Assembly: GCF_003704095.1 (NCBI RefSeq)
Contig: NW_020847750.1
Location: 1 to 64,000, forward strand
Length of the DNA: 64,000 bases
Source: Pocillopora damicornis
Taxonomy: Eukaryota
Direction: 5' to 3'
Shown here: one piece after another, positions 3,377-45,940 of the stretch
How positions within the stretch are numbered: position 1 is the first letter of the stretch
Layout: each line of letters opens with the position of its first letter
Notes under the pieces: model-generated
What the model was told of the DNA's origin: nothing
Databases searched by the model: none
What the model saw: only the letters and a program-made list of their open reading frames with translations
Program-made: the position numbers and the translations under genes

Positions 3377-3457
3377 GACTTCCGCTCAGATTGTCGAAAC
3401 GTCTGTCACCACTACAGGCAGCAGTCCTTTTTAGGACTACACTCAACCGGATGATCA
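3377..3457 (+). mobile_element. Degenerate Penelope-like terminal repeat fragment (same family as 8733-8950)
   Basis: tgacttccgctcagattgtcgaaacgtctgtcac matches 8867-8900; the CTGANGA hammerhead core is missing. Confidence 0.5.
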
Positions 3458-3478
3458 TCCCTCTTGATCCGTTATTAA

Positions 3479-3687
3479 TCAACCCCTTCACTCCCACGAT
3501 CTCGATATCATTTTTTTCTTCCCTGTTTGCGATACCTTTCTGAACATTTCAGCTCGAAGAGTTATGTGTCAAATCAATAGTTTTCATTGGTAGATGTTTA
3601 ATTTCTAATCACTTTTCTATCAGGAAATTTGTTGGTATTATTGAGAGAAATTACTTGTTGGTCATTGTTGAGAGTTAAAGGGTTTAA
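3479..3687. mobile_element. piggyBac-type MITE, degenerate copy
   Basis: Ends aaccccttcactccc ... gagagttaaagggtttaa; same terminal inverted repeats as the 16.7, 32.6 and 38.7 kb copies. Confidence 0.55.
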
Positions 3688-4117
3688 CGATCATTCTGTT
3701 TTTTCTTTTTTTCTGTTTTTCAAAAATTGTCTCACGAAGCACATGCAGGTTCTCTTCAGTTCATCATTAACACCGGTGGATATCTTATTGTCAAAATTTT
3801 AAGAGTTTTGGGCCAACACCTGACTTATTTGGGATCGACCTATGTGAGAAAGGAGTCCGCAAAAGAGAAACAAAAACAATTAATGACCTCCTCCTTCCAT
3901 ATTCCCCCCTCCCCCCCTCCCCCCCTCTGCCTCTTTCCCTAGACTGGAATATTCGCCCCTTGAATCATCGATGGCAATCACGTACCCGTCAGGCTTATCT
4001 ATAACAGATAAACTGATATTTGATATAATGTTATCATATACAAGTGTTGACGGATAACGCTGATCAGCGATCAGGCCAAGTCAACAGCCACATTATTATT
4101 AATCAACGTACAAGAAT

Positions 4118-7100
4118 ATGTTTATGAACGCTTTTTACCAGCTGATCATCTTAAGCGTGCTTCTATCGTCATCTTCTATAACAGGTAATACGCTGATGTT
4201 TTATTTCCATTTACTTTTCGATTGGAGGATTTCAACAAATATTTATGCTCTAGAAATGATTTATCAAAGATTTGTCGATTTATGTACGTTGCGCCATTCG
4301 CTTTTGATGAATGAAACAAAGCTCAAAGTTTGCGTTAAATAGTTGAGGTCAGTCAGGTGTAGCTACATGTAACTAAGTATTTGATTTTCTGTACGCAGTA
4401 TCGTCAGGTAAACAATGAGCCTATAATAAAGATGTCATTTTTACTGTTGCCCAATGGCATTGACATTGTGCGGTATTATGGGCTGTTATAAACTGCAACA
4501 AAACGATACTCGCTTAAGATACACGTGATAATTACGTCCGTGTTTTTTGGGGTTCGTTGTCTACTCTCTTTTAATACTCTCTGAACTTTGTACTTCAGTT
4601 TACTTATTGTGAACAATAAAGGATAAACCGCCCGTGGTGTTACACGTCACGCAACGCTCTCTTTCCAGCCGACCGTTACGTGTCATTTCGGCCCTCCTAT
4701 AAACTGCGGACTAAATTTGTATTGGGATGTTTTGTGATACAACTTTATTACAATATAATCAATAATTGCATCTATGTAACTTGAATCAATTGCGCCAAGG
4801 AAGCAAGAAGCGGGATGAGGTAGACGTTTCTCATCTTCACTCTGCCACAAAACGATAGACACATTTTCCATAACATTCCTGTATTGAAATTAACGGATTG
4901 AAGGAAAACAACTCTGCTAAACCATGAAGAAGGAGGGTCGAGTTATATTTCATGGTGTCACCGAGCGACTTGTGTCTAGACGAGAAAAACATCATGAGGG
5001 CAATTTAACACCCTTCCCTCCCCTAGAGCAGTCATTTACGCGAGCGTTGACTCTGCGTTATTAGGACAAGAGCCCAAGTAGTTTTAACTGTGAGTGAAAC
5101 TTTTGATTGCGTTCCTTAGTCTCTTTCCCCCTCTTTACATAGGGATGATCAGTTGGCCTGAAGGACTGTATGGATTACCAATGGCCATCAATGGCTGTCC
5201 CGTCGACCCATCTATCAACTGGAAAACTGGGACGCTGTACCAAGACTGCGAGGACACGGACCCACGAACGCAACATTCGCCCGACCTCCATTTAAACGCT
5301 TTCGTCAAATATGGAGACGTACAGCGGTCATTTTGTATGAAAACATCTTCTGTGAATGATTCCAACCGGGACCAGTGGCCCTCAGGGAAGTACTGTATTT
5401 ATCTGTGGGGGAAAACCTGCCCCTCGGGTATGCTTGAAGGTTGGGTCCAGTGGGACGACGAGAATACCATCATAATTTACAATAAAAACACGAGAAGGGG
5501 AACGTTACCAACAGGAGTTTACGGCCAGGATACGTAAGTACTCACTGAGTGGTTAAGTCACCACATTGTACATAATTATGTTCAAGTGCATTTGTACTTT
5601 AAAAGTTTTAAGTTCACCGATGATCTTTTATCAGCTAAATCGGCCATAAACCAAAAATTGTTTAAAGTAATTTCTCGAGAACCATAAAGGATATTTTTTA
5701 AATTCGCCAAACTTCAAATCGCCTGAGAAAGGCAAGCAGTTAAGCGATCAAAATTTTGTGCTCATTGATCATATAATTCCAGGTCTCGATTTAGAAACGT
5801 AAAATCTTTTAAAATCTACTCTCGTCAATTTTTTTATTTATTTATTTATTTCATGTTATCTTTGCAGCAGCCTTTTTTAGATTTTCATTTGTTTTGGCTA
5901 TTGACTTGCTTTACAGCTATGATTTTGTAATTATTAGGGACCACTCATTATTAATCGCCGGGGAGGGTTGGGAGACCACATGGTTTTTTAGGAAGAATGG
6001 AGGGGGGATCAGTTGTCGCCTACAGAGTATAGAGAGGGGACTATAGAAAATTGACTGCCAATGTGGGGAGGGTCATAAGAATATTACAGAGCCTAATCGC
6101 CTCTCGGCGGGAGAGGGGTAAGGTAAATTTTGTCGTGACACCGTCAAAATCCTTCAATTCCCCTCCCCTTCCCCCCCTTCCCGACCAGATGACAAATAAT
6201 GACTAGCCCCTTCTCTTATTTCAACATCATGTGCTGTGCTGTGCATGCGCAGACCCTATATGTAATGTACTGTCTTCGTTCCAATAGACGTATCTCTTAC
6301 TGCTGCAGTGTTCTTGGCTCGACCCAGACTCCCATCGATCTTCCGTTGACTTCGCCATTCTATCTGATAGCCTATGGTAGCAAAGTCTGCCAGTTGGTTA
6401 GGGGGGCGCAGTCTAGTCTAGAATACATATTTTACGAAACAGAATACTCGACTTTCATGACGAAAAACGATTATGGTGGTGCTCATCCCTATGGTGTGAC
6501 GAGAGACCCGCAAGGCCAAATGATCTTCTACTGCTATTATAGACGTGAGTTACAATTTATATTCTGAATTAAAACAGCGATCATCATCAGCTTTCTACAT
6601 GAGAGCACGTCAAAGAAAATCGATATTTTTTCAACAAACCGTAAACTCCAAAATGATTACAATTTTTGTATTATTTCGTACAATCTCTTATTCATAATTA
6701 TGATTAGCCCACTTTGCCTCGATCGCATCCTCTAAATTCAAAATAATATTGTAAGCTTTAGACAAGGCAAAGAAGGTAAATTATCATGAAGAAAAAATAA
6801 TGACGTACTTCCTCCATTTCGAAATAAGGTGTATTCCATCCAAATCCCCTCCTGTGATGTACCACGTGAACAAAAAAACGCTGAACCTGGGAACAAGAAC
6901 TTGCTCAAGTACGAGGCTTTAACTCGAACGATTTTGGACCTGAATTTTTAGATAGAGCTCTTTATAATGTTTTCTTTCTTTTTCGTTTTTTTCTTTTTTT
7001 TTGGTCTTAAATGCAGCTATCCATTGTCCAGCATTAAGAAAACCTGACAACGGAATGTTAAAACCAGCTCACTGTGGCGAAAATAATGAAACTACGTTTA

Positions 7101-8227
7101 ATGGCACATGTACGGTAACGTGCAATAGCGGGTACATACCTAAGAATCCCGCGGGACAAATCACGTCATGTTTGGAGAACGGAACCTGGAGCATACCCAT
7201 CGTCACTGGCTGTATACGTAAGTATTGCATTATGGGATAAACTGCTCGCTCATTAATTCTTAACCTACAGTAACAGTAAAAATGTATCTAAGTTTGTATA
7301 CTTTTACAGAAACTTGGATCCAATGTGATCCTCAAACTTTACCCATGGGGAAATTTGTGGTGCAAGTTATTAGGCAAAAAAAAAACTAGAAAGGAAAAAC
7401 TCTATTCACAGTACAAGCCGGATGAAGACCCCTCATTTTGATCCGTACATCTGCTAAACACGGGCAGCTAACTGTCTTAAGGGTATTTGTTCGTAAGAGA
7501 CTCGTTTGTGTACGATGATCTACGCCTGGCGCCGCTAAATCTAGTTGAAACCAACAGTTTTACATTTTGCTCCATTCTCAGCCGCTTCTATGATAGCAGC
7601 TTCATCTAGTATGATGACCCGAACCAGTACAATTCAACCAACAACAGTCTCGAAAACTTATCCAAGTACTCTATGCTTCACGACTTATTCTACTACAAAG
7701 TCTTCNNNNNNNNNNNNNNNNNNNNNNNNNNNNNNNNNNNNNNNNNNNNNNNNNNNNNNNNNNNNNNNNNNNNNNNNNNNNNNNNNNNNNNNNNNNNNNN
7801 NNNNNCCCTTTCCCCCTCCCCCTCTCTCATTATCCTTCCCTCTTTCCCCTTCCGACTTTCAACGCCTAGAATCGAGCAACGAACTTCTCTCTAATCCATT
7901 ATGGCTGGGTAAAATTGTGATTAATCGTCTCTATCAGTGAGCAGAGACGGATTTTTAAAAAAGCACGTACAGACAGGCACGCGCTGAAACTAGATTATAT
8001 TACTTTTGATCTGCCAGAATTTTTATGATTGGCACTATCCCTTGCTTGCTTTTCTAGTTTATCGTTTGCTGAAGGAAGAGAAGAGGAGAAGAACAAAGAG
8101 AGTGAAAGTCATCTTCATTACAAAACAATCACGTGAACGAATTGCCTTCACTCAACCTCGCTTTTTGCCACAGCTGTGGTTTCCCACCAAAGGAGACAAA
8201 ATACAGGAGGGAGAGCCTTTTTTTTGA
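4118..8227 (+). CDS. Apextrin-like (ApeC) + Sushi/CCP + Ser/Thr stalk protein, probably a type I membrane protein. Exons 4118-4184, 5143-5533, 6288-6544, 7017-7217, 7582-(gap at 7706), 8058-8227
   Basis: Signal peptide exon; ApeC motifs WPEGLYGLP..GCP, WPSGKYCIY, WDDEN, LPTGVYGQDT|RISYCC, PFYL..CQ.V.G, YCYY; Sushi CPAL.KPDNG...CNSGY...CLENGTWS; Thr-rich exon. Visible junctions are GT/AG and in phase (1,2,1,1). The last exon starts with a basic cluster; its link across the gap is inferred. Confidence 0.82.
5936..6211. mobile_element. MITE-like element in an ApeC intron
   Basis: Imperfect inverted termini agggaccactcattatt ... aataatgactagcccct, with G-rich and C-rich subterminal arms. Confidence 0.4.
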
Positions 8228-8732
8228 AAGCAGCATTTGAAGCTTTGATTTCTGTTCTATAAAGAAAAGCACTGTGGGCCTTTGGCGAAATTTTTGACGT
8301 GATGAGAAGATAATTTTGTGTATTTGGCTAAATGATTGCCAAAATTTACACAATAAAACTGCTGAAAATATTCAGTTTTGTAAAGATTAAAAGTTATACT
8401 CAAATATTGTTGTAAAGATTGACGTAAGACATATTCTGGCTTCAAACAGGTTTGAGTTAACCCTGATCGTTGAAAATAGCGATGTTATTCTTTACCGTTG
8501 TCGAGTAGTTGAGAGCGCCCTTCCGCATTGGTGGAGTGCAAAGAAAAAAAGGAACGTTTCCGCATTAAGTGTTAACCGTGTTGCTAAAATGGAAACATTT
8601 TTCTCTGCATTAATTTTTTCTTTATTTTCTTTGATTGGTTTAAAAAGTGAATAAATAATGGCGAGAAGTTGTATTTCAAATCTCTTGATAATGCTTTTTG
8701 TTACTTGAACAAACACTCAAGTTGTGTGTGAT

Positions 8733-8950
8733 AGTGTGGTTTGATCGTCTGAGTGAGTGAGTGTAGTCCGGAGAAGGACTTTTGCAGGTAGTTGTGACTG
8801 AAGTTTCGACAACCAGCTGAGCGGACGTCAGTCGACTGACAAAAACAACTCACTTGACGCTGATGATTACTTCCGCTCAAGCTGTCGAAACGTCAGTCAC
8901 TTCCCCAGACAACTATACTACACTATTACCGGGTTCAAACCATTTACTGT
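8733..8950. mobile_element. Penelope-like inverted terminal repeat remnant carrying a hammerhead ribozyme motif
   Basis: Inverted arms gtgactgaagtttcgacaacc.gctgagcgga / ttccgctcaagctgtcgaaacgtcagtcac; tail ccgggttcaaaccattta shared with about 32478-32500. Confidence 0.55.
8855..8899 (+). ncRNA. Minimal type I hammerhead ribozyme-like motif
   Basis: tgacg-CTGATGA-ttacttccgctcaagctgtc-GAAA-cg-TC-agtca: intact core, stem I tgac/gtca, tiny palindromic stem III, weakened stem II. Confidence 0.5.
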
Positions 8951-9026
8951 GCTGTACTTGTGTGTTGATCAATTTTTGTCTGCCTGAGGCGTAGGCGACA
9001 AGTCAAGGAAGAAAGCTTTGATCAAA

Positions 9027-9146
9027 GTCAGTATCTGAGCAACTGCGGACCTACCCCTCCCCTAAACCAACATGAACCCTAACTCGTGATAAGTTGACTG
9101 TTGCTGGGTTGGAGGGGGGAGCTGCGCGGTTGCTCTGATACTAAAA
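9027..9146. mobile_element. Short hairpin MITE
   Basis: Inverted termini tcagtatctgagcaactgcg / cgcggttgctctgatactaa with internal cccctccc / ggaggggg arms. Confidence 0.55.
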
Positions 9147-9328
9147 TTGAACCAAACATGTCATGCTTTTGAAATGGTTGAACGTCACTGAGGAAGCTTT
9201 CATATTAATTATCAATACATATAAGTAAGTGTGGTTTAAGAGATCGTGGCTGAGCAGATGCTAATAAGACGAAATATCTCTCGTTGCATTCATCGGTATC
9301 CTGCAAGAAAGGAAACGACTGCAGAACG

Positions 9329-10273
9329 ATGGCGGCAAATAATTTAACAGGGGAGAGAACACAAACGAGAACATTTCAAGAACTGCGCTGCTCCCCTTCC
9401 TTAGCAAGTGGATTACAACAACAGTCAATTTATCTCGCTACAGTCAACATTTTTCTCTCCGTCACAGCATTAATCGGGAATTCTCTTATCCTTGTTGCTC
9501 TTCGCAAGGAATCTTCCCTCCATCCGCCATCCAAAGTCTTGTATCTTTGTCTGGCAACAACTGATCTGTTCGTTGGTCTTCTTAGCCAGCCTCTGTATGT
9601 TACTCATTGGATGTCCTTGGTTCAAGAACACTGGAGTCTTTGTCGACTCGCAATTGACGCAGTCTCCATGACAGGCTTCACTTTATGTACAGTGTCTTTG
9701 TTGACGATGGCGGCCATAAGCGTGGACAGACTTCTCGCCCTATTGTTGGGGCTGAGATACAGACAAATCGTAACTTTGAAGCGCATGTATGCCTTGGTAG
9801 CTACCTTCTGGGTGCTATCCAGTCTCGCTGGGTTGTGTTACATGCTAGATCACCGCATAACCATTTGGTATGGCCAGACAACTAGGATATTTGGCCTCGT
9901 AATCCCAATTGCCTCGTACACAAAGATTTTCCGCACTCTCAGTCATCATGAGGCTCAAGCACAGGATCATATTCAACAACAGCCAAGCCGAGCAATTCAA
10001 CTGAACATAGCGCAATATAGAAAAGCAGTGCACAGTGCACTGTGGGTGCAGTTAGCATTAGTTGTTTGTTATGTGCCTATGAGTATGGTGGAAATTGGTA
10101 CGGCTTTTAGTAAAACATATTCATCGCAATTAATCGTTATTAGGGGAATAGCAGTAACTTTGGTCTTCTTTAACTCAACGGTGAACCCATTTCTTTACTG
10201 CTGGAGGATAAGTGAAGTAAGACTAGCAATAAAGCAATCAATCAGACAAGCACTTCGCTGTCCACGATGTTAG
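9329..10273 (+). CDS. Intronless orphan class A GPCR (cnidarian melanocortin/adenosine-receptor-like expansion)
   Basis: Seven hydrophobic segments; GN in TM1, LAxxD in TM2, DRL in TM3, CYVP in TM6, NPFLY in TM7. First ATG is 9329 (the ORF track starts at a TTG). Confidence 0.92.
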   Translation: MAANNLTGERTQTRTFQELRCSPSLASGLQQQSIYLATVNIFLSVTALIGNSLILVALRKESSLHPPSKVLYLCLATTDLFVGLLSQPLYVTHWMSLVQEHWSLCRLAIDAVSMTGFTLCTVSLLTMAAISVDRLLALLLGLRYRQIVTLKRMYALVATFWVLSSLAGLCYMLDHRITIWYGQTTRIFGLVIPIASYTKIFRTLSHHEAQAQDHIQQQPSRAIQLNIAQYRKAVHSALWVQLALVVCYVPMSMVEIGTAFSKTYSSQLIVIRGIAVTLVFFNSTVNPFLYCWRISEVRLAIKQSIRQALRCPRC

Positions 10274-12734
10274 ATCCTCCACGATTTACAATCGTGCTGA
10301 TGTTTTCAAAGCTGACTTAAAGAGTCTCATTTATTATTAGAGAAAACTCGTTGTGCAAGAAGAAACGAGAATCAAAAGAAGAGAATAAAATTAATTGCAG
10401 AACTCCGTTCAATTGAATGTACACAAGACTAACATCTTTCGTGTTTCGTGCTTCCTTCTTGATCATGGATACAACTTGTGATTTAATTACAAATAAACAT
10501 GCGTGCACGGTTTAGAAACAAACGGGGTGTTGGATTGATTTTAATATCTCTGCAATCTTCCCGGCAAAATGGAAATAAGTGATAAAAGGGGAGGAAGGTA
10601 GAGGAGATAGAGAGGAAGATAGCTGTTATTTAGCAGTAGTGAACAATTTCAAATTTTCACCGAACAATGAGGAAGCCCCATAATCCCCGTCAAGCCGGTC
10701 ACTAGACTAGCTAGCGACTCGAATTTGTGGACAGTGTTTTATATTACTTATGAAAGTATAAAGATGTTTCTATTTCTAGCAATTGACGTGTAACCGAGCA
10801 CATGAAAGAAATTTGACTTTGTAACACTGGAGGGGTCTTTAAGATCGATCGTTTTTCCGGATAGAATGTTACCGTGGGCGAATAGATTTCGAGGGGAAAG
10901 TGTTATAAACACTGATCCACTAAAAGTTGTTTCCGAGCTGTAATCGTTGTAAGTCTAGGACTTCTTATCTAATAGCGTTCACCAGTCAACTTGCACTTAC
11001 TCTTTTTTTGTCAAGGCCTCTTTAAAACGCATTACCACATGAGAGCAATCCAGAATTTTCTAACATTCAGGTAGAATTTATCCATTTCTCGAGCAAATAA
11101 CATGTCTCCTTGATAAACTACTTATCTTATCGTTCATAAAGTGGTTAAAGAGCGTTCTTTTATCGTAATAAATAATGGAAAAACTGATGTCTTTATGTTT
11201 GCCGACTTAAATTTGAGAATTAACTTTTAAAGTTTATTTACGCTTAAATTCAACTACTACAAATGAAATAAACAGCTGGTTCCCACCAACGCAGTCTGGG
11301 TGGGTCAACAGTCAAAAGGCCAATAACTAGCCGCCAAACTCGTAGAAGATCTTAATGGGGTAGTGACTTTTTAAGCTCACGGTTAAAATTTTTGTCTTTT
11401 CACCGCTAACGGTTTTGAGAAATTTTTCCGTGGAAGTCACCAGAAAATTTTTTAAGGTTAATATTTTTTACGGCTAATGGTTAAAATTTATCAATTTTTA
11501 TGTCCAGCAGCTATTTTTTTTCACTGCTTTACGACTAACAGATAAACCTCATTGAGACCTTTTTTTTACGTACGCCGGAGTCAAGCCCCGCGCTATGTGG
11601 GCAAATGGCACAAATAACATCCTTTTACAGATCCTTTTTGATAAATTTACAGCAAAAAAACAGAACTGACTTCTCTCAGGAAACACTTTCGGTGTCGTCA
11701 AACGTGTCTTCAAACGTCAGCTAGCCGTGAGTTTTAGAGTGAGTTCCACATTAACGAGTCACTCAGCCGTTATCGCTTAATATGCAATTTAAAAGATATT
11801 TGTTTTCAACCCTGAAGTATAAAAATTGACTCGGTGGGCAGCACTGAAAACTTGTAGTGATGAAAAGTAGGTTTTAAATACACAAAAAAGTTCTGTCCGG
11901 ATCCGTCTGAGACAGAAATATTCCGAAAGTTTTCAATAAAAAAAAATTAGAACCCTGTTTAAAAGATAAGCTAATATAACAGCTCATTGCTCTACATTAC
12001 GTAAATTATTGTGCCTACAGCAGCAGCAATTTGCATGTAGGAAATTGGCAAAATATGTATGTCTGAAATATTTTGCGAAATGTGCCAATGGTTGAAGAAA
12101 GAAGAGTGTGAAAAAGTGAAGCGTTATCAACAATAAGTAACTCGTCATTCAGAAAAACTTAACCAGCAACCGTCAAATGACCTAAAATTAAATCGTTTCC
12201 AGTCAGAGATATAACTCCACACATAAGACCCTCCTCTGAAACACTGCAAGAATATCTGGACCCAATCACCAATCGTACCGCTTGTATTCCTCGTTATAAC
12301 TCTGTTTCTATTAACCTGCCATCGTACCCACATAAAAACCCACTTCTAATCCCGATTATACAGTGTAAAAAAGACAGTTGCAACGAACTTGCTTTTAAGA
12401 ATGTAAAAAATGTAAGGTTAAAAGTGATATTACAGGCATGTTAAGTTGTTTTTATTGGAGAAGTATTTTAGCACCTGTGGTTTTTCCTCAGGAAATAAAA
12501 TACACAGTAAGACATGCGTTGAGCAAAAGAATTCGCGTGAAAGTCCTTCGAAGCAATTTGACGCGCGTGAAACTGTTCCCAATTGTCACGTCTTTTCGTG
12601 GTAGGCAGCTTTGGCGCGTTCGAATGTTCTTCGAATGTTCTTGAGTGTGAGACAATATATGTCTGTGTGTACAGTATTGTACAGAATAGTAATACAGTTA
12701 ACTCCTTTTTACTCTGTGAAGAACACAGCAGTCA

Positions 12735-22879: not shown

Positions 22880-23519
22880 GACATCTTTTACGACGGTATC
22901 ATTACGACCTTACTACAGTATTTTGCGAGACTGGGTGTTCACGATGAAGAGGAGCAATTGATGAACTGATTGACTCTCTCTGTTTTTACGTACACTCGTG
23001 GTCATAAGCTTGCGAAAAATGCGGAACGACAAGAGAGGATCTCCTATTTAAGACCACGAAAGGAAATTGAGTTATGAATTCCCCATTGCAAGCCAAGAGT
23101 ATGAATATTGTAAAATCCGAGTGTGTATGCATTTTACAAATTTAGCGAATTAGTGTCAAACCCTGAGTGCACAGGTCTACCAATCAAGCCACTACGTCCC
23201 CTTACGTTGCTAAGTGCAGTCAAAGAAGAAACTTAAATCTTGAATTCAAGTACACTGTTACTATTTTTATGTATAAACTTAGTTCGCTATATTCATTATC
23301 CTGCAATGTTAATTAGATAAATATATAAATAATTTAATAATTGCTTGTGGTGAAACATTACATTGATTCACTAGCTAGACTTAAAATTTTGGAGTGAGGT
23401 AGCGGAGTTGCCTCCTTTTCAAGAATGTCGCGAAGTGGCTGTTCATTCGTGTAGATCTATTCAGCACAGAAAACTCTGTCCATTACTTGCGTTGCATCTT
23501 TTCATATGATTACAATCCT

Positions 23520-24723
23520 CTACTCAGTAAAAACCTTATTCCACATTTTATCCACAAGAGTTTCACATTGCCTTTTCCAACTGTACGTCTGTTCATAAGA
23601 TTTTCGCAGGCTTTGTATTTCTTTCAGGCGTTTTCCCCTTTTCTTCTCGAATACCTTTATGATCGCGTCTGACCAATCTTTTGCCTTTTCACTCTCAACC
23701 ACACAGTGGTCTCCAAATTCTACATCACTTAGCGCTTTTGCGAAACCTGAGCTTTTGCTAACAAGAATTGGCACACCGGCAGACAAGGCCTCGAGCGCAG
23801 TGAAACCGAATCCTTCAGTTCTTGAAGGCATAAGAACAAGATCCACGCTGACTAGTAATTGCTTTAATAGTTTTCTATCTTCAACGTAACACCCGAAACT
23901 CAATTGATTGTCGCGAACACCATACTGCAAAATCCTCTTCGCAAAATTGTCTTGTTGCTCACTAGATGCACCGACAAATTTTATTTGAAAGCAATCTTTT
24001 TTTAGCTCGTTAAGTGCGAATGCCTCGGCTACTATGTCGTAACCTTTAAGTCTGAAGTCCTCGTTATCACCACGCCCAAACACAAGAACCTGAAACATGT
24101 CATTCTCGTGTGGTGATTGTTCTGCATCCGTTAGATCCTCTATTATGCCAGGAGTAAATTTCATAACATCTTGCTCTTTCTTAACACAACGAAGACGATG
24201 GGAGTAAAAGCTCTCTAACTTTGGACCAACTGGCAGGACAAGGTCGGCTTTTGCACACAGCTCAAGCTCGCTTAGGTTCTTCTCTTCACCTTTGGCAATA
24301 GCTTTTGGATAGTCTTTGAACATACCAAGTTGCTCAGGCACGGTGTGAACCACGTGAACCCACTTGCACCTATGGGAGTTTTTAATAACTTGAGCTTGTC
24401 TTCCAAGCTTCACACCATGGCCGATGATTATGTCAATTTGAGGGTCTTTCGGTGGGAAAAATAATTGTTCTTGGGAAGTACAGGCTGTGAGTTGTTCTGC
24501 CTCGATAATTGTAACCCCTTTCTCTTTTGCTGTTTCCTTTACTTCTCTCCCACAAACACCATGTGGGACGAAGAAAGTGACATCGACGTCTGGATTTCTC
24601 GCCAAGTGAATAGCAAGTTCTCTATTAAAAGTTGATAAACCACCTTTCAGTGAATTCCATTCATCTGCCAATATAGTTATTCTCAATATTCTGTCGATGG
24701 AAATGCTCGAGTCCTCTGGTTCA
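23520..24723 (-). CDS. GT-B fold GT4 (Glycos_transf_1) glycosyltransferase domain; terminal exon of a longer protein
   Basis: EWNSLKGGLSTFNRELA, HVVHT, FGRG..EDF.LKGYD, PSRTEGFGFTALEALSAGVP (intact EX7E). The ORF track starts at a TTG; the frame stays open (EPEDSSISIDRIL) up to the gap at 24724 with no ATG. Confidence 0.9.
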
Positions 24724-24823
24724 NNNNNNNNNNNNNNNNNNNNNNNNNNNNNNNNNNNNNNNNNNNNNNNNNNNNNNNNNNNNNNNNNNNNNNNNNNNNN
24801 NNNNNNNNNNNNNNNNNNNNNNN

Positions 24824-26231
24824 TTCAAACTTCGAAAGAGTATCATGTTATTGTATAGAAATGTCCAGAATATAATTAACGTACTATGTAAGCAAAATTA
24901 AGCATCAAATAGACAACGCTTAAGCAACCTCATGACGCAGAGAAATACATGTTGCACTTTTTACGGANNNNNNNNNNNNNNNNNNNNNNNNNNNNNNNNN
25001 NNNNNNNNNNNNNNNNNNNNNNNNNNNNNNNNNNNNNNNNNNNNNNNNNNNNNNNNNNNNNNNNNNNNNNNNNNNNNNNNNNNNNNNNNNNNNNNNNNNN
25101 NNNNNNNNNNNNNNNNNNNNNNNNNNNNNNNNNNNNNNNNNNNNNNNNNNNNNNNNNNNNNNNNNNNNNNNNNNNNNNNNNNNNNNNNNNNNNNNNNNNN
25201 NNNNNNNNNNNNNNNNNNNNNNNNNNNNNNNNNNNNNNNNNNNNNNNNNNNNNNNNNNNNNNNNNNNNNNNNNNNNNNNNNNNNNNNNNNNNNNNNNNNN
25301 NNNNNNNNNNNNNNNNNNNNNNNNNNNNNNNNNNNNNNNNNNNNNNNNNNNNNNNNNNNNNNNNNNNNNNNNNNNNNNNNNNNNNNNNNNNNNNNNNNNN
25401 NNNNNNNNNNNNNNNNNNNNNNNNNNNNNNNNNNNNNNNNNNNNNNNNNNNNNNNNNNNNNNNNNNNNNNNNNNNNNNNNNNNNNNNNNNNNNNNNNNNN
25501 NNNNNNNNNNNNNNNNNNNNNNNNNNNNNNNNNNNNNNNNNNNNNNNNNNNNNNNNNNNNNNNNNNNNNNNNNNNNNNNNNNNNNNNNNNNNNNNNNNNN
25601 NNNNNNNNNNNNNNNNNNNNNNNNNNNNNNNNNNNNNNNNNNNNNNNNGGTGAGGTAAGACGCTACAAGGCCAGTTGGGATAATTGGAAAAGTGCATAGC
25701 TAGATTTTTTTGAGAGGGCTTATACACAGGAGGAGCACAAACCTCTTGTGAGGTCTCTGGGNNNNNNNNNNNNNNNNNNNNNNNNNNNNNNNNNCATACA
25801 GCAGGGAAAAGTCCGACTTGTGTGTCGGCTTTTAAAAATTGCGCACAATTTCCATATGTTTACCGTCCAGGTGAACATGAACAATGTACGATCGCATTTA
25901 TTTCATTTGTTTCAGCTATTTTAAATTTGAAAGAGCTGAAAACAACGTACTTCTTCACATCCACACCCCTGTCAAGTCTCCATAGACCGTACCATCAAAT
26001 TATCCTTTACTCCATTTCCCTTAATTTCGTTTCCAGGGTTATTCTTGTTATTAGTAATTTCTTTTCTCAGAAAGCGACTTTAAAATCGAATGATCTGGGA
26101 ACAAGAATGCTGGACAACAGGTCCCGGTTTTTCTAAGGGCGGATGACGCTATCCACAAGACCAGACAAATCCAATGGATTATGTAGCAAGTCTTGTGAAA
26201 ACCCTGTAATGAACTGGGTCCATGTTGAAAA
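24824..26231 (+). repeat. Island of polyamine oxidase locus sequence (upstream flank, exon-1 end and intron), probably a misplaced contig
   Basis: 24824-24967 matches 59044-59190; 25649-25761 (ggtgag|gtaagacg...) matches 59620-59720; 25800-26117 matches 59755-60068. Bounded by 100-N gaps. Confidence 0.8.
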
Positions 26232-26331
26232 NNNNNNNNNNNNNNNNNNNNNNNNNNNNNNNNNNNNNNNNNNNNNNNNNNNNNNNNNNNNNNNNNNNNN
26301 NNNNNNNNNNNNNNNNNNNNNNNNNNNNNNN

Positions 26332-29330
26332 TCAATTTTTTTACTACCAGTTCATAGCCTTTCAGGTCAGTTGCACTGTGTGATATAGCTATCATCACTT
26401 TTCCGTGGAATTCTTTCATGTCTTTAGAAGTCGATGGCCGTTCATTCAGGGAAAGCTCTACAACACTGCTTACTATGATCTCATTTGGTCCAAGAGATGG
26501 TGATCGGATTCTTGGACTCCATAATGAGCATATGACCTCCGTAGGTTTCCTCACAGCACGGCATGCAAATGAAAAACAACCAGGAAGCTCTTTTAACATT
26601 TTTACCTCTCCTCTCTCTGTGATCGTTTCTCTGAAAATTTTTAGATCCTGTTGTCAGACTTGAGTTAAAGAGTGAAAATAATACTATGGACGGAAATACA
26701 AAAAAACAGCCAGGCTAGTTATTCAATCGATGGCCATTATTAACGAAAGCACATGTCACTCGTAACTCGGGAAAAACCCAAAGATTGAATTTGCAGAGAG
26801 CCGACCTTAAAATATATCTAATATCCTCAGTTTTCACTTCGTAATTACATCATAAGCAAACATACTTACTTGAAAATCTCCCTCTTAATCTCTGTCTTGG
26901 AAAATAGTCGAGTGTTCAGAGCTGAAGCTCAAACAGAGAGAAATATCAAAATCAAAACAAAACTATTATTAACTGTGAGCAATTAGAACGAATTCCGGTT
27001 GCAGCGACCTTACCGGTAATTAAGCCAAGGGTTGCTTTTATTGCCTTTTTGGTGCTTATGTTATGTGGCATAACTAAAAAGTGATCAGTTCATTAATTAG
27101 GTTACCGGTAGTGTTTCAGCTTGATCCGGGTCAGTTGAAGATCTTAGCAAGAGAGGATCGCCCAATATTAGCAAGAAATGTGAATGTGTTTCTCGCGAAA
27201 AGTCTGCAATAATCTGCAAGAGACACCTAAGAATCCTCAACCTATCGAATTACCGAGTTTGCGCCCTGAATACAAATTATCATATACTTAAGAACTTAAG
27301 CCGCCACAACAACCGTGTATGTCAGTTGTACCGCAAGCGTTGAACTGAATGCTCCGATCATTTGCATTGCTTGATGAGTGTGATCACCTTTTGATCGCAC
27401 GAAACAGATAAGCTGAAATAAAACGATAAATCTCTCATGAAGCCTTCAACTATTAAATCATCACAGAGACTGCTCCTCTAAGATTAGAGTGATCGTTGGA
27501 CTTTCAGAGAGTTATTCAGTCCCAAGACCGCCCTTTTAGAATTCTCACAATTGCATGTCAAACGACCTATTTTTGTGTCGCCAGTCGCTTCCCTGAACAC
27601 CACTCAACGTTTAAGATCAACCCTTCAGAAAAAAAACAAGATTTGTCGGTGATTTTATACTGTAGGTAGAATATGCACACGCAATTTTGCGCTTAGAAAT
27701 CGCAGAAATAAATTACTTGTGTTCGATTTAGTTATAGCCCTTATTTAGATTAGTTTTGTTATTAATAATTAATTTAGCTCAATTGGATCAGTAACCGAAC
27801 TTGAAGAAAATGAATTGTCCAATTATGTTCGATTCACCGTAAAGTTCGAATGCCTAAATACCAAGACTTACTCTTCTACTTAATACATCGATAGTAAAAC
27901 TCACCCATTTCATTTTCTGTCACCTTTACACTAACAGGGCAAATAAGAAGTCTGTCACCACTAATTTTAACTTCAATGCTGTAGGTACCTGGCACCTTCG
28001 GCGTAAAATGTATTTCAAGCTTCCCATCTTTTTTGTTGCTAATAGCCAAATCCGCCACTTCCGGTGCAGGTTCAATCAATACTTCTACAAGACCCTTTAG
28101 GTCTGGCTGGTTAATTGTGTCACCCTCGGTCGTTTTTGGACATAATGTCATCACTGCCTTTACGCCAGCCTCAAGAGTTTCATCCAGTCCTTCCAAAGTG
28201 GTCAGACTCAGATCTATCTCCTCAGTTAAGATGTAACCCAGTCTTTGGCCCGCCTCACTTGCTGCCGTAAATTTAATATAAGAGGTTTCGCGATGTTGTG
28301 GAACTTCAGTTTCGCAAAGATCTTTAACTCTTTTATACAAATTTTTTCGATTTTGCATAATGTATGAACTTGAACCATACAGAACCACTTTTTCCACAAA
28401 GTCAACAGTTCGATCCACTTGTTCCACCAGTGATTTCGCTTTTCTTTTAGCATCAACAATTTTCTCAAGTCTTATAACGTGCGTATTCTCAATGTATTCT
28501 AGATATTCGACTGCCTCACGCTGACGTTCTTGACTTTCTACAATTATTTGTTGACATTTCCCAACTTCTCGTAAGGCTCTACGTTTGTCGACTGTAGCGT
28601 GGATTGTCGACGCTGGAGTTGTTTCGTCGCATTTGGACAGGGTTAGCATTTTTTCGTTTGCAATGTTTATTTTCGCTTGTTCAATTGCGTGTGTTGTAAC
28701 GAAGGATGCATGCGTTTCAAGCGCTCGTTCTCGAATGCCTGAAATTATTTCTTCGGCTGCCTCACAGACTCCATGATTAGCGATTTCAGCATTGATTTCT
28801 AACTCTTCGATACTTTTTTCAAACTGCTCGATCGCATCGATCAACACGTTTTCTTTTCCTCTAGCTAGCTCAATGTTCGTAATAATTCTCTCCACTTCGA
28901 TGTCAGCTGCCTCGTCGAGAGCCAAAAGTTCATGTTCCTGGTATGTCGTCACGGAGCAGAAAAAGCAAATGCAAGACTGACAATTCAGGCAGAAATAGAT
29001 TGTTGTTGACTGCAAGTGGTAATTCTCCAAGCAGAAATTTTCGCGCTTCAATAAGACCTCGTAAAGTTCTGGTCGAATCTCCGCTGCTGGTATGATTGTG
29101 TGTCCTTCAAACGTAACTTGAAGAGTCTCGTGTGCAGTCCAACAGCTGGGGCACATAAACATTTTACAGTCGACGCAATAACAACCTTTGAAGCTGTTTA
29201 TATTACAATTATCACATGTAATACTAACACCATCGTTACTTTTCTGAAAAGCAGAAGTACTCGTTAACCTCTCTGGGAAGTCGGCCGCTACTCTCTCCCT
29301 CCGAGCTTTAACTTCTTCCACTCGAGGCAT
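26332..29330 (-). CDS. RING-less TRIM-like protein (B-box1, degenerate B-box2, coiled coil, filamin Ig) spliced to a ZU5-like domain. Exons 29330-27905, 26921-26870, 26630-(gap at 26331)
   Basis: CDNC..YCVDC..MCPSC..AH...H; filamin DGKLEIHFTPKVPGTYSIEVKISG. Donor atgg|gtgagt (phase 1), 52-nt exon (1 to 2), then ttttcag|a gaa acg in frame with ITERGEV...PSLGPNEIIVSSVVELS...VMIAISHSA...YELVVK (ZU5-like). Confidence 0.8.
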
Positions 29331-30398
29331 TTCGAGGGGAACTTTTAGGCGTACATTTCATTAAAATCGCCACAAAATAAATGAAAACAATAACATAGCA
29401 AATATTCTTAGTTCCCTAAAGAGCCCCAGAAAAAGCAGGTAAATAGGTATTGAGCGTCTTTCCTCAGAAACTTATTTTCTAAGAAATCCCTGGTGCCCTG
29501 AGGAGAGTGGCCATCTGATCTGCCGCGCGAGATTGGTAGCGAAGTTAGACACGAAGGTGACGACTATCGAGAAAGTCGCTCGAAAGTCATCTCGCCCGAA
29601 GCTCTGTCGCCCTAAACTAGAGTTATGTCGTCCGAGATTAAGTAAAGCTACGTCAGCGTTATATATTAGGCTTTGAATCTTATTTTCAAGAAACGTACAA
29701 TTAAGGATGTGTGCATTTATTTTAAATTTTCTGAGTGATCGTTAAACTATGAGTACAAGTTTTCAAAATCCTTGTCAGGCAACCAGAGAACACAGGTTCT
29801 TAGATGCCAGATATTGTTTACATTATCATTAAATTTTCTATCACCATGGTTTCCCTTTTGGAGAGGAGCATTATCCCGAGGCTTGTTGACGTTAGCAGGC
29901 GACAACTCAGCATAACTTGGACAGATCTTTAGGAATTTCATGGATTTAACCACGCAGAAGAAGTTGCATTATTGTTAGACATTCAAAGCTTTCAAAGAAT
30001 GGAACAACAAAGGTGTCTATATAAGGAGAATGATCGGGGCAAGGAATATTCGAATTTGTTTCCATGAGACCCATTGTTTTATAAACTAGACAAGCAGACG
30101 TCTGCATTGTTCTGAAAAATTTGATGAAAGGTACCTTTTCATCCTTTCTCAATGCCTGCTCGAATTTGTCAATCCTCTCCCCCTGAATATCTTTTGAGCA
30201 TCCTGTGCTCTAGGGTCTTGCTAAGATGCTACATGTCATTGATTGGCCGTAGCCGGAGATCTGACTACGAAAACACGGGCAGCGGTATATCCTTGTAGGT
30301 TAATACTCAACATGGATGCAATGGCGGCCTCTGATGCGCCTATATGAGTTACCAGTAATGAATCTTCTCAATGGTTTTGCCAGGATTGTGATACTCAG

Positions 30399-32177
30399 AT
30401 GTCAAGAAGAGAAGTTTTAGCACTGTACAGGCGAATATTTCGAGTAGCACGGCAATGGAGAGCCGCAATACCTGCAGATACTGAGGCAGAGCGACAGTAC
30501 ATAAAAGATGAAGCCAGACAATTATTTCGTAAGAACAAGAACGTGAGTGAGGAATTATCGAAATTTCCATTATATTGGTACCTTAGTTTAATTATAAGAA
30601 AGCATTCGTAAATATGGAGTGGAGCTCGGAAATTTCAGGCTTAAGTTTCACTGTATGTGAGTCGGTCCAAATTCTGCCCATTAGAAATATTTGAAAGATG
30701 TAATGTTCCCTCAAAAGTGGTTTTGGTGAGATAATATTTCGGGTTGATCTACTCCATGTTAAATTGATTTGAAATATTTGCATGAGGCAGAATTTTCCAC
30801 TCATCATGGAAACAAAACTGGTTGCAGCTTAGAGTGCTAGGCAGTTTGGCAGTTTGTTATTTTTATGGTCCAGATACTATTGTGTGATTGTGAATAATCA
30901 CAAGGTTATCTGGTACTTTTCAGTTTTATGCAAGTTAGGAGGTGGCCTTTTAAAAAGAGTTGAAGAGAAAAGTTACCAAGTGTACTGAGGATTGCCTTCC
31001 CAGCATGTACCTGTACTAAATACCCAGCATTCTTTGTTCCTCATATACTTAGTAGCAGCTAACTAAGACTTTTTTCTCCTAAGTTCTTGATTGGAATTGA
31101 TCATCAGAAATAGTATGTTCTGTTCTTGGATTAAGTAGTCTTGTTCAAGAGAATAATGATATTGTGCTAATACATGGAAGCTCTGTCTAAAGACTGGTTA
31201 CTTTGATAGGTGTCCCTCTATAATAAGGGGGGTTGTGATCTTGAGGGAAAAAAGAGAAGCTGTTTGTGGTCTGAGAAGAGCAAAATACCTGGCATTTTGA
31301 GAAATTTGTGACCACCTTTAATAGATCCTTAAAGTTTAAGTGATTATTAACATACATCTTTAAGTTCTAGAGATGGAGCTGAAATAATTGTCCTTTTACA
31401 GATTACTAACACAAACGAGATAATGCTTTGTATCCATGAGGCCAATGCACGAGTTGAGATGGGTATGTAACTTAAAAGTTTTTAAAATTGTGTTGCATTC
31501 TTTCAGAAATGGTCTGATAGCCTTCATTATGAAGGTCAGTTAGGGTAGTCACAAAATACATTCCAAAAGAGTTAATACAGTAGCATTAAAGGAGAAGTTA
31601 TTGTGATGGCAAAATACATATTTTAGACTGAATCATTACTCTATGTATTTCAGGGCTTCACTATGGAACACCTTATCCTAGAATGGTAAGCCTGATATGC
31701 TTAGGAAGTTTTTTTTTTAACTGTGCTATAAATGCTTTTAAACACACTCCATTCATGGCAGATCATTCCCATACCATCTACACAACTAATAACCATAAGC
31801 TGTGAAGAGTGACACCACTTTCCCCAAAAAGACTGCCAAGTGGGTTATTCTGATTCAAATTTGAATTTGTAAGCAATTATAAAATGATTTGAGGTTGTTT
31901 GAATTGCATTTAATTTCTAGCCTCACCTTACAAAACTTAAATCATTGTATTTCAGTCCAAAAATGACTAGCTTAAGTTATTCTGAAATACTTTAACTTAC
32001 TATAAATTGAAATATCACTCAACTGAATGGGGAAATTACTTGTGTTATACATTATAGATACACATGCCGCCAACAGCTGTTCCAAAAACAAATACAAAAG
32101 AGCGGAAAACCCAAGAACGAATTAGAAAACAGGCCAAACCTGTTTACATGCACTCAGATGATGATGTTGATAGATAA
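30399..32177 (+). CDS. LYRM1: LYR motif-containing protein 1. Exons 30399-30542, 31402-31462, 31654-31685, 32058-32177
   Basis: EVLALYRRIFRVARQW...ERQYIKDEARQLFRKNKN|IT...ARVEMG|LHYGTPYPRM|IHMPP...KQAKPVYMHS; phases verified. Confidence 0.93.
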
Positions 32178-44908: not shown

Positions 44909-45940
44909 TCATGCAGGTGGTTTCAAAGATTTATCACATTGCGTGTGCTTGTCAGCCACTGCGTTATTTACCACGCTCTCGATTCGTATGGCTCGCAATG
45001 ATTGGGGTGAAGCTCCTTGATTTCTGACCGAGCATACCCCTCGTAGCGTGTCCATAATGGCGTTTCGAATGTGCCTCATCTTCCAGCAGTATATCACAGG
45101 ATTCAAAGTCGAGTTGAGATATGCAAGGGTTAGTGACCAAACAAAAAATCCCTTCAAGGGAGTGGTACGGCCATAGATTATCATAGACGACGTGGAGATG
45201 AAAAAAGGCGCATAACACGCCCAAAATACGACATATACGTAAAATATGCCCACAGTAGTTTTAAGGACGTTCGCAAAATTGGCCCCCTCTCCATTATACG
45301 CTTCTTGTCGCACTTCGCCACCTTCGATATCATTTTTAAGTCGACGCACGGTTAGATAAATCTTACTGTAAGCAATCGTTGTAAGAAAAAGACCAACGAG
45401 GCCTCCTACACACATGATTAGGTACTTCACATGGGGCGAAAGCCAGAGTACTATTACAGAAACACTCACACTCGCCAACCATAAAGAAGCCACTGAGGTA
45501 ACAACACGCTTGTGAGTCACAAGCTCCTGGTATCTGAGATGAAGATGGATTGCTAGGAATCTGTCTGCACTTACAGCCAACACGCCCAAGAAAGACGTTA
45601 TCGTGAACATGCCGATTATCGCATCGAAAACCATGTACGTGCTACAATTGGGGATAGCTTTGGATAATCCCTTGACAAGGAGCCAGGTGTAGAAAGGCTG
45701 ACTCAATAAGCCCACACCAACATCTGATGCAGCAAGACTCAGAAGGAGAGTTTCCAGAGTCTTCGGTAAACATGACGTCTTTTTAATCGCATAGATTGCT
45801 GCAATGTTCATCATGACTGCAGTGTGGCAGAGCAAAATGTTGAACACACAATTAGTGATGTACGTCGAACGAAGATCTTCAACTTCGGTAATTGAGGGGA
45901 AAAACTGCAACACCAATATATCACAAGACAAATTCTGCAT
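44909..45940 (-). CDS. Intronless orphan class A GPCR, 343 aa
   Basis: LAASD in TM2, DRF in TM3, CYAP in TM6, NSTLNPVIYCW in TM7; same broad family as 9329-10273. Confidence 0.92.
   Translation of the reverse strand: MQNLSCDILVLQFFPSITEVEDLRSTYITNCVFNILLCHTAVMMNIAAIYAIKKTSCLPKTLETLLLSLAASDVGVGLLSQPFYTWLLVKGLSKAIPNCSTYMVFDAIIGMFTITSFLGVLAVSADRFLAIHLHLRYQELVTHKRVVTSVASLWLASVSVSVIVLWLSPHVKYLIMCVGGLVGLFLTTIAYSKIYLTVRRLKNDIEGGEVRQEAYNGEGANFANVLKTTVGIFYVYVVFWACYAPFFISTSSMIIYGRTTPLKGFFVWSLTLAYLNSTLNPVIYCWKMRHIRNAIMDTLRGVCSVRNQGASPQSLRAIRIESVVNNAVADKHTQCDKSLKPPA

What the first reader, a model, noticed from the sequence alone, without database searches (positions are those of the whole stretch)
23520..29330. 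Candidate chimeric immune protein: RING-less TRIM scaffold (B-boxes, coiled coil, filamin) + ZU5 + catalytically intact GT4 glycosyltransferase
Seen: the TRIM-like exon has a strong donor right after the filamin domain. A 52-nt exon carries the frame (phase 1 to 2) into a ZU5-like exon that runs into a gap. Downstream on the same strand, a GT4 exon with no start codon and an intact EX7E motif emerges from another gap. The only sequence in between is foreign oxidase-locus DNA flanked by 100-N gaps. Established: TRIM2/3/71-type proteins continue from filamin into NHL repeats; ZU5-UPA modules occur in PIDD1, UNC5 and NLRP1/CARD8 and can autoproteolyse; Glycos_transf_1 domains occur fused to coral NLR-type proteins. 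Inference: one gene in which a dimerising TRIM scaffold lacking RING and NHL carries a sugar-transfer effector, possibly released by ZU5 cleavage. I do not know of this architecture being described.
Basis: partly seen in the sequence, partly recalled or inferred. Interest (0 to 1): 0.82.

Follow-up and report, generated by a model that had tools for sequence, protein, structure and literature searches.

The report
Coral TRIM-like ZU5 glycosyltransferase fusion gene
In the coral Pocillopora damicornis, a RING-less TRIM-type scaffold is spliced in frame to a PIDD/ankyrin-type ZU5 module that RNA links to a "conflict-type" GT4 glycosyltransferase; this adds a new front end to a coral immune-gene family already catalogued by computation.

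Summary
On the minus strand lie three coding pieces: a B-box/coiled-coil/filamin exon (29330-27905), a 52-nt exon (26921-26870) and a ZU5-like exon (26630-26332, cut by a gap). A GT4-conflict glycosyltransferase exon follows (24723-23523, EX7E intact).

One 3671-nt RNA contig joins the ZU5 exon to the GT exon through 1195 letters that the assembly lacks. That count keeps the frame and gives 1391 codons.

A gapless contig from a related Pocillopora has the same exon order. It carries ZU5-ZU5-UPA-type exons in the gap zone and no NACHT gene. The DNA between the window's gaps is misplaced filler copied from 59-60 kb.

The novelty claim needs trimming. ZU5+ZU5+GT4 proteins and a large coral GT4 expansion are already listed by Kaur et al. 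2021 (eLife). Paralogs here carry NB-ARC-TPR or Death in front of the same module. Only the TRIM-like front end was not found elsewhere. Self-cleavage and the immune role remain inference. An unspliced, TRIM-only form may coexist. Verdict: a real gene and a new variant of a known kind.

The parts
27905..29330 (-). Exon A: start ATG at 29330, then 475 codons plus 1 nt. Holds a B-box1-like finger (about 29216-29097), B-box2 (29042-28926), long coiled-coil helices (about 28919-28311) and a filamin Ig domain (about 28205-27918). No RING.
   Evidence: Pfam. The AlphaFold model has helices at residues 138-340 and a beta-sandwich at 378-471. Best fold match is the Lin-41/TRIM71 filamin domain 4UMG, TM 0.82. 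B-box zinc ligands are invariant in alignment A2. RNA contigs cover the exon.
26922..27904 (-). Intron 1 (GT..AG). It contains the read-through stop at 27878-27876, which would end a 484-aa TRIM-only product if the intron is retained.
   Evidence: Joint 27905>26921 appears in 4 runs, with an alternative acceptor at 26927 in X5. Unspliced contigs also cover the intron. Against the ortholog there are 12 indel events here and none in exon A.
26870..26921 (-). Exon B: a 52-nt connector exon that takes the frame from phase 1 to phase 2.
   Evidence: Joints on both sides are seen in 4 runs. The exon is 100% identical in ortholog L039 and its splice sites are kept.
26631..26869 (-). Intron 2 (GT..AG).
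   Evidence: Joint 26870>26630 appears in 4 runs, with sides of 30-53 nt.
26332..26630 (-). Exon C: the first about 99 codons of ZU5 domain 1, cut off by the assembly gap.
   Evidence: 41-42% identical to P0181 (1e-21) and P0153 (9e-16), across the stretch where P0153 hits Pfam ZU5. Ten paralogous exons exist in the genome, two of them over the ZU5 cut-off. dN/dS against the ortholog is 0.14. Pfam itself does not reach this exon.
24724..26331 (.). Gap zone: N runs at 24724-24823, 24968-25648, 25762-25794 and 26232-26331, plus three misplaced pieces (24824-24967, 25649-25761, 25795-26231). The true content was not read here. The transcript has 1195 letters in this place.
   Evidence: The pieces are 86-91% copies of 59043-60070 and are absent from L039. 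They have almost no RNA cover. The ortholog has 4.2 kb here, with exons homologous to the end of ZU5-1, ZU5-2 and UPA.
23520..24723 (-). Last exon: GT4-conflict glycosyltransferase, 400 codons from 24722, with stop TAG at 23522-23520. EX7E (EGFGFTALE) lies at 23816-23790. The 5' end is cut by the gap; in the ortholog the exon starts about 44 nt further upstream.
   Evidence: PF20706 1.2e-83 and Glycos_transf_1 6.8e-22. PDB sequence matches to GlgA, MshA-type and WaaG GT-B enzymes line up the EX7E region. dN/dS is 0.22. RNA contigs cover it in 4 runs.

Best explanation
This is one expressed, multi-exon gene of Pocillopora. It encodes a protein of about 1390 residues.

**Architecture.**
- The N-terminal half derives from a TRIM-NHL-type gene: two B-boxes, a long coiled coil and a filamin Ig domain, with no RING and no NHL propeller.
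- A 52-nt exon splices it to an ankyrin/PIDD1-type ZU5-ZU5-UPA module.
- That module ends in a GT4 'conflict-system' glycosyltransferase, in the place where most paralogs carry a Death domain.

**Shown here.** The exons, the splices, the transcript link from ZU5 to GT, the kept frame, the conservation in a sister lineage and the family relations.

**Inferred.**
- The coiled coil dimerises the protein as in TRIM proteins.
- The filamin and B-box part serves as the sensing or assembly end, replacing the NB-ARC-TPR sensor of the paralogs.
- The ZU5-ZU5-UPA part is a regulatory hinge that may self-cleave.
- The GT4 domain is the output and transfers a sugar from a nucleotide sugar onto a target that is not yet known.

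The gene belongs to the coral expansion of GT4 proteins that Kaur et al. 2021 proposed as immune or conflict effectors.
For: - **Domains.** Pfam finds B-box, Filamin and GT4-conflict.
- **Splices.** Joints 27905>26921 and 26870>26630 appear in four RNA runs from three studies. RNA contig X2 record 9 joins 26332 to 24723 with 1195 letters between.
- **The bridging contig is spliced.** The orthologous genomic distance is 4206 nt, against 1195 letters in the RNA contig.
- **Frame.** 1197 nt gives 399 codons. The total is 4173 nt, or 1391 codons.
- **Ortholog.** L039 is a gapless 11.7-kb contig with the same exon order. Its splice sites are conserved, and the LYR-gene neighbour is kept on the 5' side.
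- **Gap content in the ortholog.** A frame-keeping GT-AG exon model exists through ZU5-1, ZU5-2, UPA and GT.
- **Selection.** dN/dS is 0.14 for ZU5, 0.22 for GT and 0.58 for the TRIM exon. The TRIM exon has no indels in 1426 nt, against 12 in the 983-nt intron.
- **ZU5 fold of the family.** Profile A1 hits ankyrin-B ZU5-ZU5-UPA-DD (4D8O) at 9.5e-10. The paralog model matches 4D8O at 1.3e-15, then UNC5b and CARD8.
- **Paralog context.** ZU5-like exons sit beside GT4 copies on 6 of 10 other contigs. NB-ARC and TPR frames lie upstream on C495, and a TPR frame on C1088.
- **Literature.** GT4 is a predicted conflict effector, and ZU5+ZU5+GT4 is listed for Acropora (PMC8195603).
Against: - The 1195 transcript letters were not read, so an in-frame stop there cannot be excluded.
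- My exon model in the ortholog sums to 1102 nt, not 1195. The 93-nt difference (31 codons) is unexplained.
- The TRIM-to-52-nt joint rests on contig sides of only 27-32 nt.
- Unspliced contigs over intron 1 are about as deep as the spliced joint in three of four runs.
- The TRIM exon evolves fast (dN/dS 0.58; Fisher p = 0.055 against neutrality).
- No protein with B-box or Filamin plus ZU5 or GT4 was found in the searches run, so there is no second example of the full fusion. Those searches have length and word limits.
- Nothing here tests enzyme activity, the substrate, dimerisation or cleavage.
Confidence: 0.8

Rival explanations
1. Two functional units. One is a truncated TRIM-only protein of 484 aa that ends at the 27876 stop because intron 1 is retained. 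The other is a separate ZU5-ZU5-UPA-GT4 protein, like the 935-aa Stylophora one, started from a promoter in intron 1 or from the ATG at 26599. On this view the spliced TRIM-ZU5 joint is a minor conjoined transcript.
For: - Contigs cover intron 1 in all four runs, at depths close to the spliced joint in X2, X5 and X8.
- The ZU5 and GT contigs are deeper than the TRIM contigs in X1 and X2. The tool warns that depth is unreliable.
- Stylophora P0151 is a ZU5..GT4 protein without such a front end.
- Constraint on the TRIM exon is weaker.
Against: - The joint is seen in every run. In X1 it is three times deeper than the unspliced contig (29.5 against 9.45).
- The only joints into the 52-nt exon come from 27905.
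- The 52-nt exon has no ATG, keeps the frame exactly and is 100% conserved with its splice sites.
- The TRIM exon has stayed open and free of indels in both lineages.
Confidence: 0.15
2. A decaying fusion. The gene is transcribed and spliced, but the product is no longer functional: a young, lineage-specific rearrangement on its way to becoming a pseudogene.
For: - The fusion was found only in Pocillopora.
- The TRIM exon has dN/dS 0.58, and 1.6 in the B-box part, on few changes.
- The PIDD-type HFS site reads HLS in the ortholog.
Against: - ZU5 and GT are under clear purifying selection (0.14 and 0.22; Fisher p = 0.0006 for GT).
- Exon A has no stops and no indels. Only 12% of simulations with 60 random substitutions keep it open.
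- B-box zinc ligands and EX7E are intact.
- The gene is expressed in three independent studies.
Confidence: 0.04
3. Assembly or scaffolding chimera. On this view the TRIM/ZU5 piece and the GT piece do not belong together and were merely joined across gaps.
For: Four gaps and misplaced filler lie between the two pieces.
Against: An independent gapless metagenome contig has both pieces in the same order and strand. A spliced RNA contig joins them.
Confidence: 0.01

Closest known systems
Coral ZU5+ZU5+GT4 proteins of the GT4 'conflict' expansion (Kaur, Iyer, Burroughs, Aravind 2021, eLife, PMC8195603; Pfam PF20706)
   Same: Same C-terminal two thirds: tandem ZU5, a UPA-like region, then a GT4-conflict domain. 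The source data list ZU5+ZU5+GT4 and DEATH+ZU5+ZU5+GT4 in Acropora. Stylophora P0151 matches at 40-50% identity.
   Different: None of the listed architectures has a B-box, coiled coil or filamin in front of ZU5 or GT4. 'bbox' and 'filamin' have zero occurrences in the GT4 source file. No member of the family has been tested at the bench.
PIDD1, ankyrin and UNC5 ZU5-ZU5-UPA-Death supramodule; NLRP1/CARD8 FIIND
   Same: The paralog family gives profile and fold matches to ankyrin-B ZU5-ZU5-UPA-DD (4D8O), UNC5b (3G5B) and CARD8 (7JN7). The paralog consensus has H-F-S-R-F at the end of ZU5-2, the position of the PIDD1 self-cleavage motif.
   Different: The Death or CARD output is replaced by an enzyme. 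In the ortholog of this gene the motif reads H-L-S. Cleavage has not been tested.
TRIM-NHL proteins (TRIM2, TRIM3, TRIM71/LIN-41) and TRIM45
   Same: B-box, coiled coil and filamin in the same order. Paralogs in this genome and in other corals continue into NHL repeats, and some carry a RING. The filamin domain is closest to that of Lin-41.
   Different: There is no RING, so no E3 ligase activity is expected. There is no NHL propeller. The gene continues into ZU5-UPA-GT4 instead.
Coral NB-ARC/NACHT-TPR-ZU5-ZU5-UPA receptors and NACHT+glycosyl transferase NLRs (Hamada et al. 2013, as cited in PMC4083563)
   Same: Paralogs share the same ZU5-UPA module and the same GT4 family. C495 (NB-ARC, TPR) and C1088 (TPR) in this genome, and P0178 and P0179 elsewhere, are examples.
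   Different: This gene has no STAND NTPase. The TRIM-like scaffold sits where the NTPase-TPR sensor would be.

Membership tests
GT4-conflict glycosyltransferase (Pfam PF20706; CAZy GT4, retaining GT-B) | Full-length match to the family profile above its cut-off | tested here: met
   281.7 bits against a cut-off of 26, covering profile positions 2-385 of 385. The ortholog scores 268 bits.
GT4-conflict glycosyltransferase (Pfam PF20706; CAZy GT4, retaining GT-B) | EX7E motif in the C-terminal Rossmann half | tested here: met
   EGFGFTALE at residues 303-311 of the exon translation, window 23816-23790. It aligns with the same motif of GlgA in PDB 3FRO.
GT4-conflict glycosyltransferase (Pfam PF20706; CAZy GT4, retaining GT-B) | Sugar-transfer activity from a nucleotide sugar | not testable with these tools
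   Needs an enzyme assay.
ZU5-ZU5-UPA supramodule (PIDD1, ankyrin, UNC5) | ZU5 domain recognisable by the Pfam profile PF00791 | tested here: inconclusive
   The window's exon and the ortholog's exons give no direct Pfam hit, even at E = 10. The link is transitive. The exon is 42% identical (9e-16) to P0153 over the stretch where P0153 hits ZU5 at 33 bits. Paralog exons on C1529 and C495 pass the cut-off.
ZU5-ZU5-UPA supramodule (PIDD1, ankyrin, UNC5) | Second ZU5 and UPA following the first | tested here: inconclusive
   This part lies in the window's gap and was not read. The ortholog has homologous exons (tblastn to P0151, P0181 and P0153 from 1e-5 to 1e-15). The paralog P0181 model matches 4D8O at 1.3e-15, but its mean pLDDT is only 48.
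ZU5-ZU5-UPA supramodule (PIDD1, ankyrin, UNC5) | Self-cleavage at an HFS-type site (PIDD1, UNC5CL and FIIND only; not all ZU5 proteins) | not testable with these tools
   The paralog consensus is HFSRF and the ortholog reads HLS. Cleavage needs a protein experiment.
TRIM (tripartite motif) proteins | N-terminal RING finger | tested here: not met
   No RING hit. The open frame starts 9 codons upstream of the ATG. No RING-like ORF lies in the 1 kb up to the divergent LYR gene. No joint was seen in the 70 nt upstream of the ATG that were laid (29331-29400).
TRIM (tripartite motif) proteins | B-box zinc finger(s) | tested here: met
   zf-B_box at 34.7 bits against a cut-off of 24.1, in two stretches. 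Cys and His ligands are invariant in A2.
TRIM (tripartite motif) proteins | Long coiled coil after the B-box | tested here: met
   The AlphaFold model has helices at 138-231, 240-318 and 321-340, with pLDDT 80-94. Dimerisation itself was not tested.
TRIM-NHL subgroup | Filamin domain followed by an NHL beta-propeller | tested here: not met
   Filamin is present. There is no NHL. The exon is spliced to the 52-nt and ZU5 exons instead, while paralogs keep NHL.

The most novel reading that the evidence does not exclude
A TRIM-derived, dimerising B-box/coiled-coil/filamin sensor has taken the place of the STAND NTPase in a PIDD1/NLRP1-like self-cleaving module whose released output is a glycosyltransferase. 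That would be an animal innate-immune switch built without an NTPase, one that acts by sugar-tagging a target rather than by death-fold signalling.
Probability: 0.15. Interest if true: 0.75.

Novelty: new variant of a known kind. Interest (0 to 1): 0.5.

Why it matters
Corals hold very large, little-studied sets of putative immune genes. GT4 glycosyltransferases have been proposed as immune effectors only from comparative genomics, and none has been tested at the bench.

This locus shows that the ZU5-ZU5-UPA-GT4 cassette can be attached to quite different front ends: NB-ARC-TPR, Death, or here a RING-less TRIM scaffold. That fits exon shuffling of sensor and effector modules. It is a compact, expressed gene with a conserved ortholog, so it is a usable candidate for asking what a GT4 effector modifies and whether the ZU5 module self-cleaves.

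It also corrects the assembly. The gene is broken in the P. damicornis scaffold by gaps and misplaced filler, so gene sets built on that scaffold probably lack or split it.

Tried and rejected
- **Direct Pfam ZU5 call.** None was obtained on the window exon or on the ortholog's exons, even at E = 10. phmmer of the ortholog's ZU5 exon against PDB gave nothing.
- **P0012.** I took it for a possible ZU5-1 relative. It starts only at the end of ZU5-1, so the BLASTP against the window exon was empty.
- **The missing 93 nt.** The search for a 93-nt exon in the ortholog gave only two weak candidates. Relaxed tblastn of the paralog linkers gave nothing significant. One exhaustive splice-site enumeration timed out.
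- **A second full fusion.** The best 150 of 8156 GT4 relatives (seven with a C-terminal GT4 scanned), plus two region searches of the ZU5-UPA part, showed STAND-TPR, DED/Death and Roc-COR partners. None had B-box or filamin. Length windows and word seeding limit these searches. A full-length ortholog in P. verrucosa could have been missed.
- **Within this genome.** The contigs with TRIM-like matches and those with GT4 or ZU5-like matches overlap only at this locus.
- **Paralog structure model.** The P0181 model has low confidence (pLDDT 48). I use only its top fold matches, which agree with the sequence profile.
  - No letters were placed in or proposed for the N runs.
  - The spliced, joined protein was not sent to any search, fold or complex tool. 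Exons were searched one by one by reference.
Full report
**Where and what.** The genome is Pocillopora damicornis. A hit named for that species (P0181) lies on a contig of 20,609 bases, the length of contig C2360 of this assembly. The finding lies on the minus strand of the window.

**Check of the observation.**
- The frame at 29330-27876 holds two B-boxes and a filamin domain, with no RING (Pfam zf-B_box 2e-08, Filamin 1.2e-07).
- A G|GTGAGT donor follows base 27905.
- A 52-nt exon (26921-26870) lies between an AG acceptor and a GTAAGT donor.
- An exon starting at 26630 runs open into the gap at 26332.
- On the far side of the gaps, a frame is open from the gap edge (24723) to a TAG at 23522-23520, with no ATG in front.
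- That frame is a full-length GT4-conflict glycosyltransferase (PF20706, 1.2e-83, profile positions 2-385 of 385).
- Its EX7E motif is intact (EGFGFTALE, 23816-23790).

**Continuity across the gaps (the test asked for first).** I laid Logan contigs of four RNA runs from three studies on 23420-29400.
- All four runs show the joints 27905>26921 and 26870>26630. Both are GT..AG on the minus strand and sit exactly at the predicted boundaries. X5 also uses an acceptor 6 nt upstream.
- One 3671-nt contig (X2, record 9) lies on 26630-26332 and on 24723-23423, with 1195 letters between that the assembly does not have.
- The ZU5 exon leaves 1 nt over, and base 24723 is the third base of a codon. So 1 + 1195 + 1 = 1197 = 399 codons, and the frame is kept.
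- The whole coding sequence would be 4173 nt, or 1391 codons.
- I did not read those 1195 letters and put nothing into the N runs.
- The 30-letter loose ends that the tool printed at both gap edges continue the two exons in the same way as the ortholog's exons do.

**The DNA between the gaps.** The pieces 24824-24967, 25649-25761 and 25795-26231 have almost no RNA cover. They are 86-91% copies of window 59043-60070, in the same order, and they are absent from the ortholog.

**Independent genomic copy.**
- The protein search with exon A found 484-aa gene calls that are 92% identical.
- One of them lies on a gapless 11,747-base Tara metagenome scaffold (L039).
- L039 is 93.7% identical to the window over 29400-26332 and 97.2% identical over 24723-23420. 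I treat it as a related Pocillopora lineage. I used it only for exon order, frames and domain calls.
- It carries the same LYR-motif gene head-to-head with exon A. That leaves no room for an upstream RING exon.
- The splice sites are conserved and the 52-nt exon is 100% identical.
- Between the points that match 26332 and 24723 it has 4206 nt.
- That stretch holds exons homologous to the end of ZU5-1, to ZU5-2 and to UPA of paralogous proteins (tblastn E from 1e-5 to 1e-24). It holds no NACHT.
- The RNA contig has only 1195 letters in this place, so it is spliced and therefore RNA-derived.
- A GT-AG model that keeps the frame through all these exons exists. It sums to 1102 nt, and 93 nt (31 codons) remain unexplained.

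**Selection between window and ortholog.**

| Part | dN/dS |
|---|---|
| ZU5 exon | 0.14 |
| GT exon | 0.22 (Fisher p = 0.0006) |
| TRIM-like exon | 0.58 (Fisher p = 0.055) |

The TRIM-like exon has no indel in 1426 nt, whereas the 983-nt intron next to it has 12. Only 12% of simulations with 60 random substitutions keep its frame open. The front end is therefore fast-evolving but maintained.

**What the parts are.**
- *Exon A.* The AlphaFold model shows long helices at residues 138-340 and an Ig sandwich at 378-471. The best fold match is the Lin-41/TRIM71 filamin domain (4UMG, TM 0.82). Relatives in this genome and in other corals continue in one exon into NHL repeats, and some have a RING. 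This copy has lost both.
- *Exon C.* Pfam's ZU5 profile does not reach it. It is 41-42% identical to P0181 and P0153 (1e-21, 9e-16). The match covers the stretch where P0153 scores over the ZU5 cut-off.
- *The ZU5 family.* The family profile hits ankyrin-B ZU5-ZU5-UPA-DD (4D8O) at 9.5e-10. A low-confidence model of the paralog P0181 finds 4D8O (1.3e-15), ankyrin-R ZU5A-ZU5B, UNC5b and CARD8 as its top folds.

**Family context.**
- The genome has at least 70 GT4-conflict matches.
- It has 10 paralogs of the ZU5-like exon, six of them on contigs that also hold GT4.
- On C495 the ZU5 exons and GT4 follow NB-ARC and TPR frames; on C1088 a TPR frame lies upstream.
- Annotated relatives fall into three kinds:
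  - NACHT-TPR-ZU5-ZU5-UPA-Death (P0178, P0179);
  - PIDD1-like ZU5-ZU5-UPA-Death (P0180 to P0182);
  - a Stylophora ZU5..GT4 protein (P0151).
- GT4 therefore sits where the Death domain usually is.
- TRIM-like and GT4/ZU5-like matches share no contig other than this one.

**Known or new.**
- Kaur et al. 2021 (PMC8195603) describe GT4 as a predicted conflict effector with more than 500 paralogs in Acropora and very variable architectures.
- Their source data list ZU5+ZU5+GT4 and DEATH+ZU5+ZU5+GT4. They list no B-box or filamin together with GT4.
- NACHT plus glycosyl transferase in corals has been reported since Hamada et al. 2013, as cited in PMC4083563.
- The back two thirds of this protein are thus a known, computationally catalogued kind. 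The TRIM-like front end is the new part.

**Mechanism.**
- *Shown:* one locus, spliced RNA, a kept frame and conserved domains.
- *Inferred from the families:* dimerisation through the TRIM coiled coil, sensing or assembly by the B-box and filamin part, a ZU5-UPA hinge and GT4 as output.
- *Self-cleavage is possible but weakly founded.* The paralog consensus has HFSRF at the end of ZU5-2, and the ortholog of this gene reads HLS there.

**Open points.**
- Unspliced contigs over intron 1 suggest a coexisting TRIM-only form that ends at the 27876 stop.
- 93 nt of the transcript are not explained.

- The joined spliced protein was not sent to any tool.
- No gap letters were filled or proposed.

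Noticed in passing
window 30399-30608 (+): A small LYR-motif (Complex1_LYR) gene lies head-to-head with the TRIM-like exon. The same neighbour is present on the orthologous contig (L039 679-891). This fixes the 5' limit of the fusion gene.
   Followed up: partly
window 24824-26231 and 59043-60070: Three short pieces between the gaps are 86-91% copies of 59043-60070, a stretch between N runs at the far edge of the oxidase-array zone flagged by another finding (49080-59625). They look like haplotig or misjoined fragments. The assembly of both zones is unreliable.
   Followed up: partly
window 1653-2951 (-), 9284-10270 (+), 44912-45940 (-): One exon encodes a BTB-BACK-PHR protein. Two single-exon rhodopsin-type GPCR genes are also present. 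These are ordinary neighbours with no evident link to the fusion gene.
   Followed up: no
G000:C3941:15208-31598: Five GT4-conflict copies on both strands lie within about 17 kb. They are the best-scoring GT4 matches in the genome (E down to 1.5e-99), with open frames of about 381-392 aa, so they look like stand-alone GT4 genes.
   Followed up: no
G000:C2968, C629, C155: Dense arrays of TRIM-NHL-like single-exon genes (open frames of about 630-760 aa) are the closest paralogs of exon A, at 40-49% identity. Several copies have internal stops.
   Followed up: no
L031 (G000:C495) 174-11072 and L033 (G000:C1088) 735-10000: These paralogous loci carry NB-ARC (C495 only) and TPR frames, then a ZU5-like exon, ZU5-2/UPA-like exons and GT4, all on one strand. 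In C1088 the stretch from the ZU5 exon to the GT4 exon has no gaps. Whether each is one gene was not tested with RNA here.
   Followed up: partly
L039 7497-9048: The last intron of the ortholog is 1.5 kb and should hide about 93 nt of exon that I could not locate. Alternatively the P. damicornis transcript differs here.
   Followed up: partly
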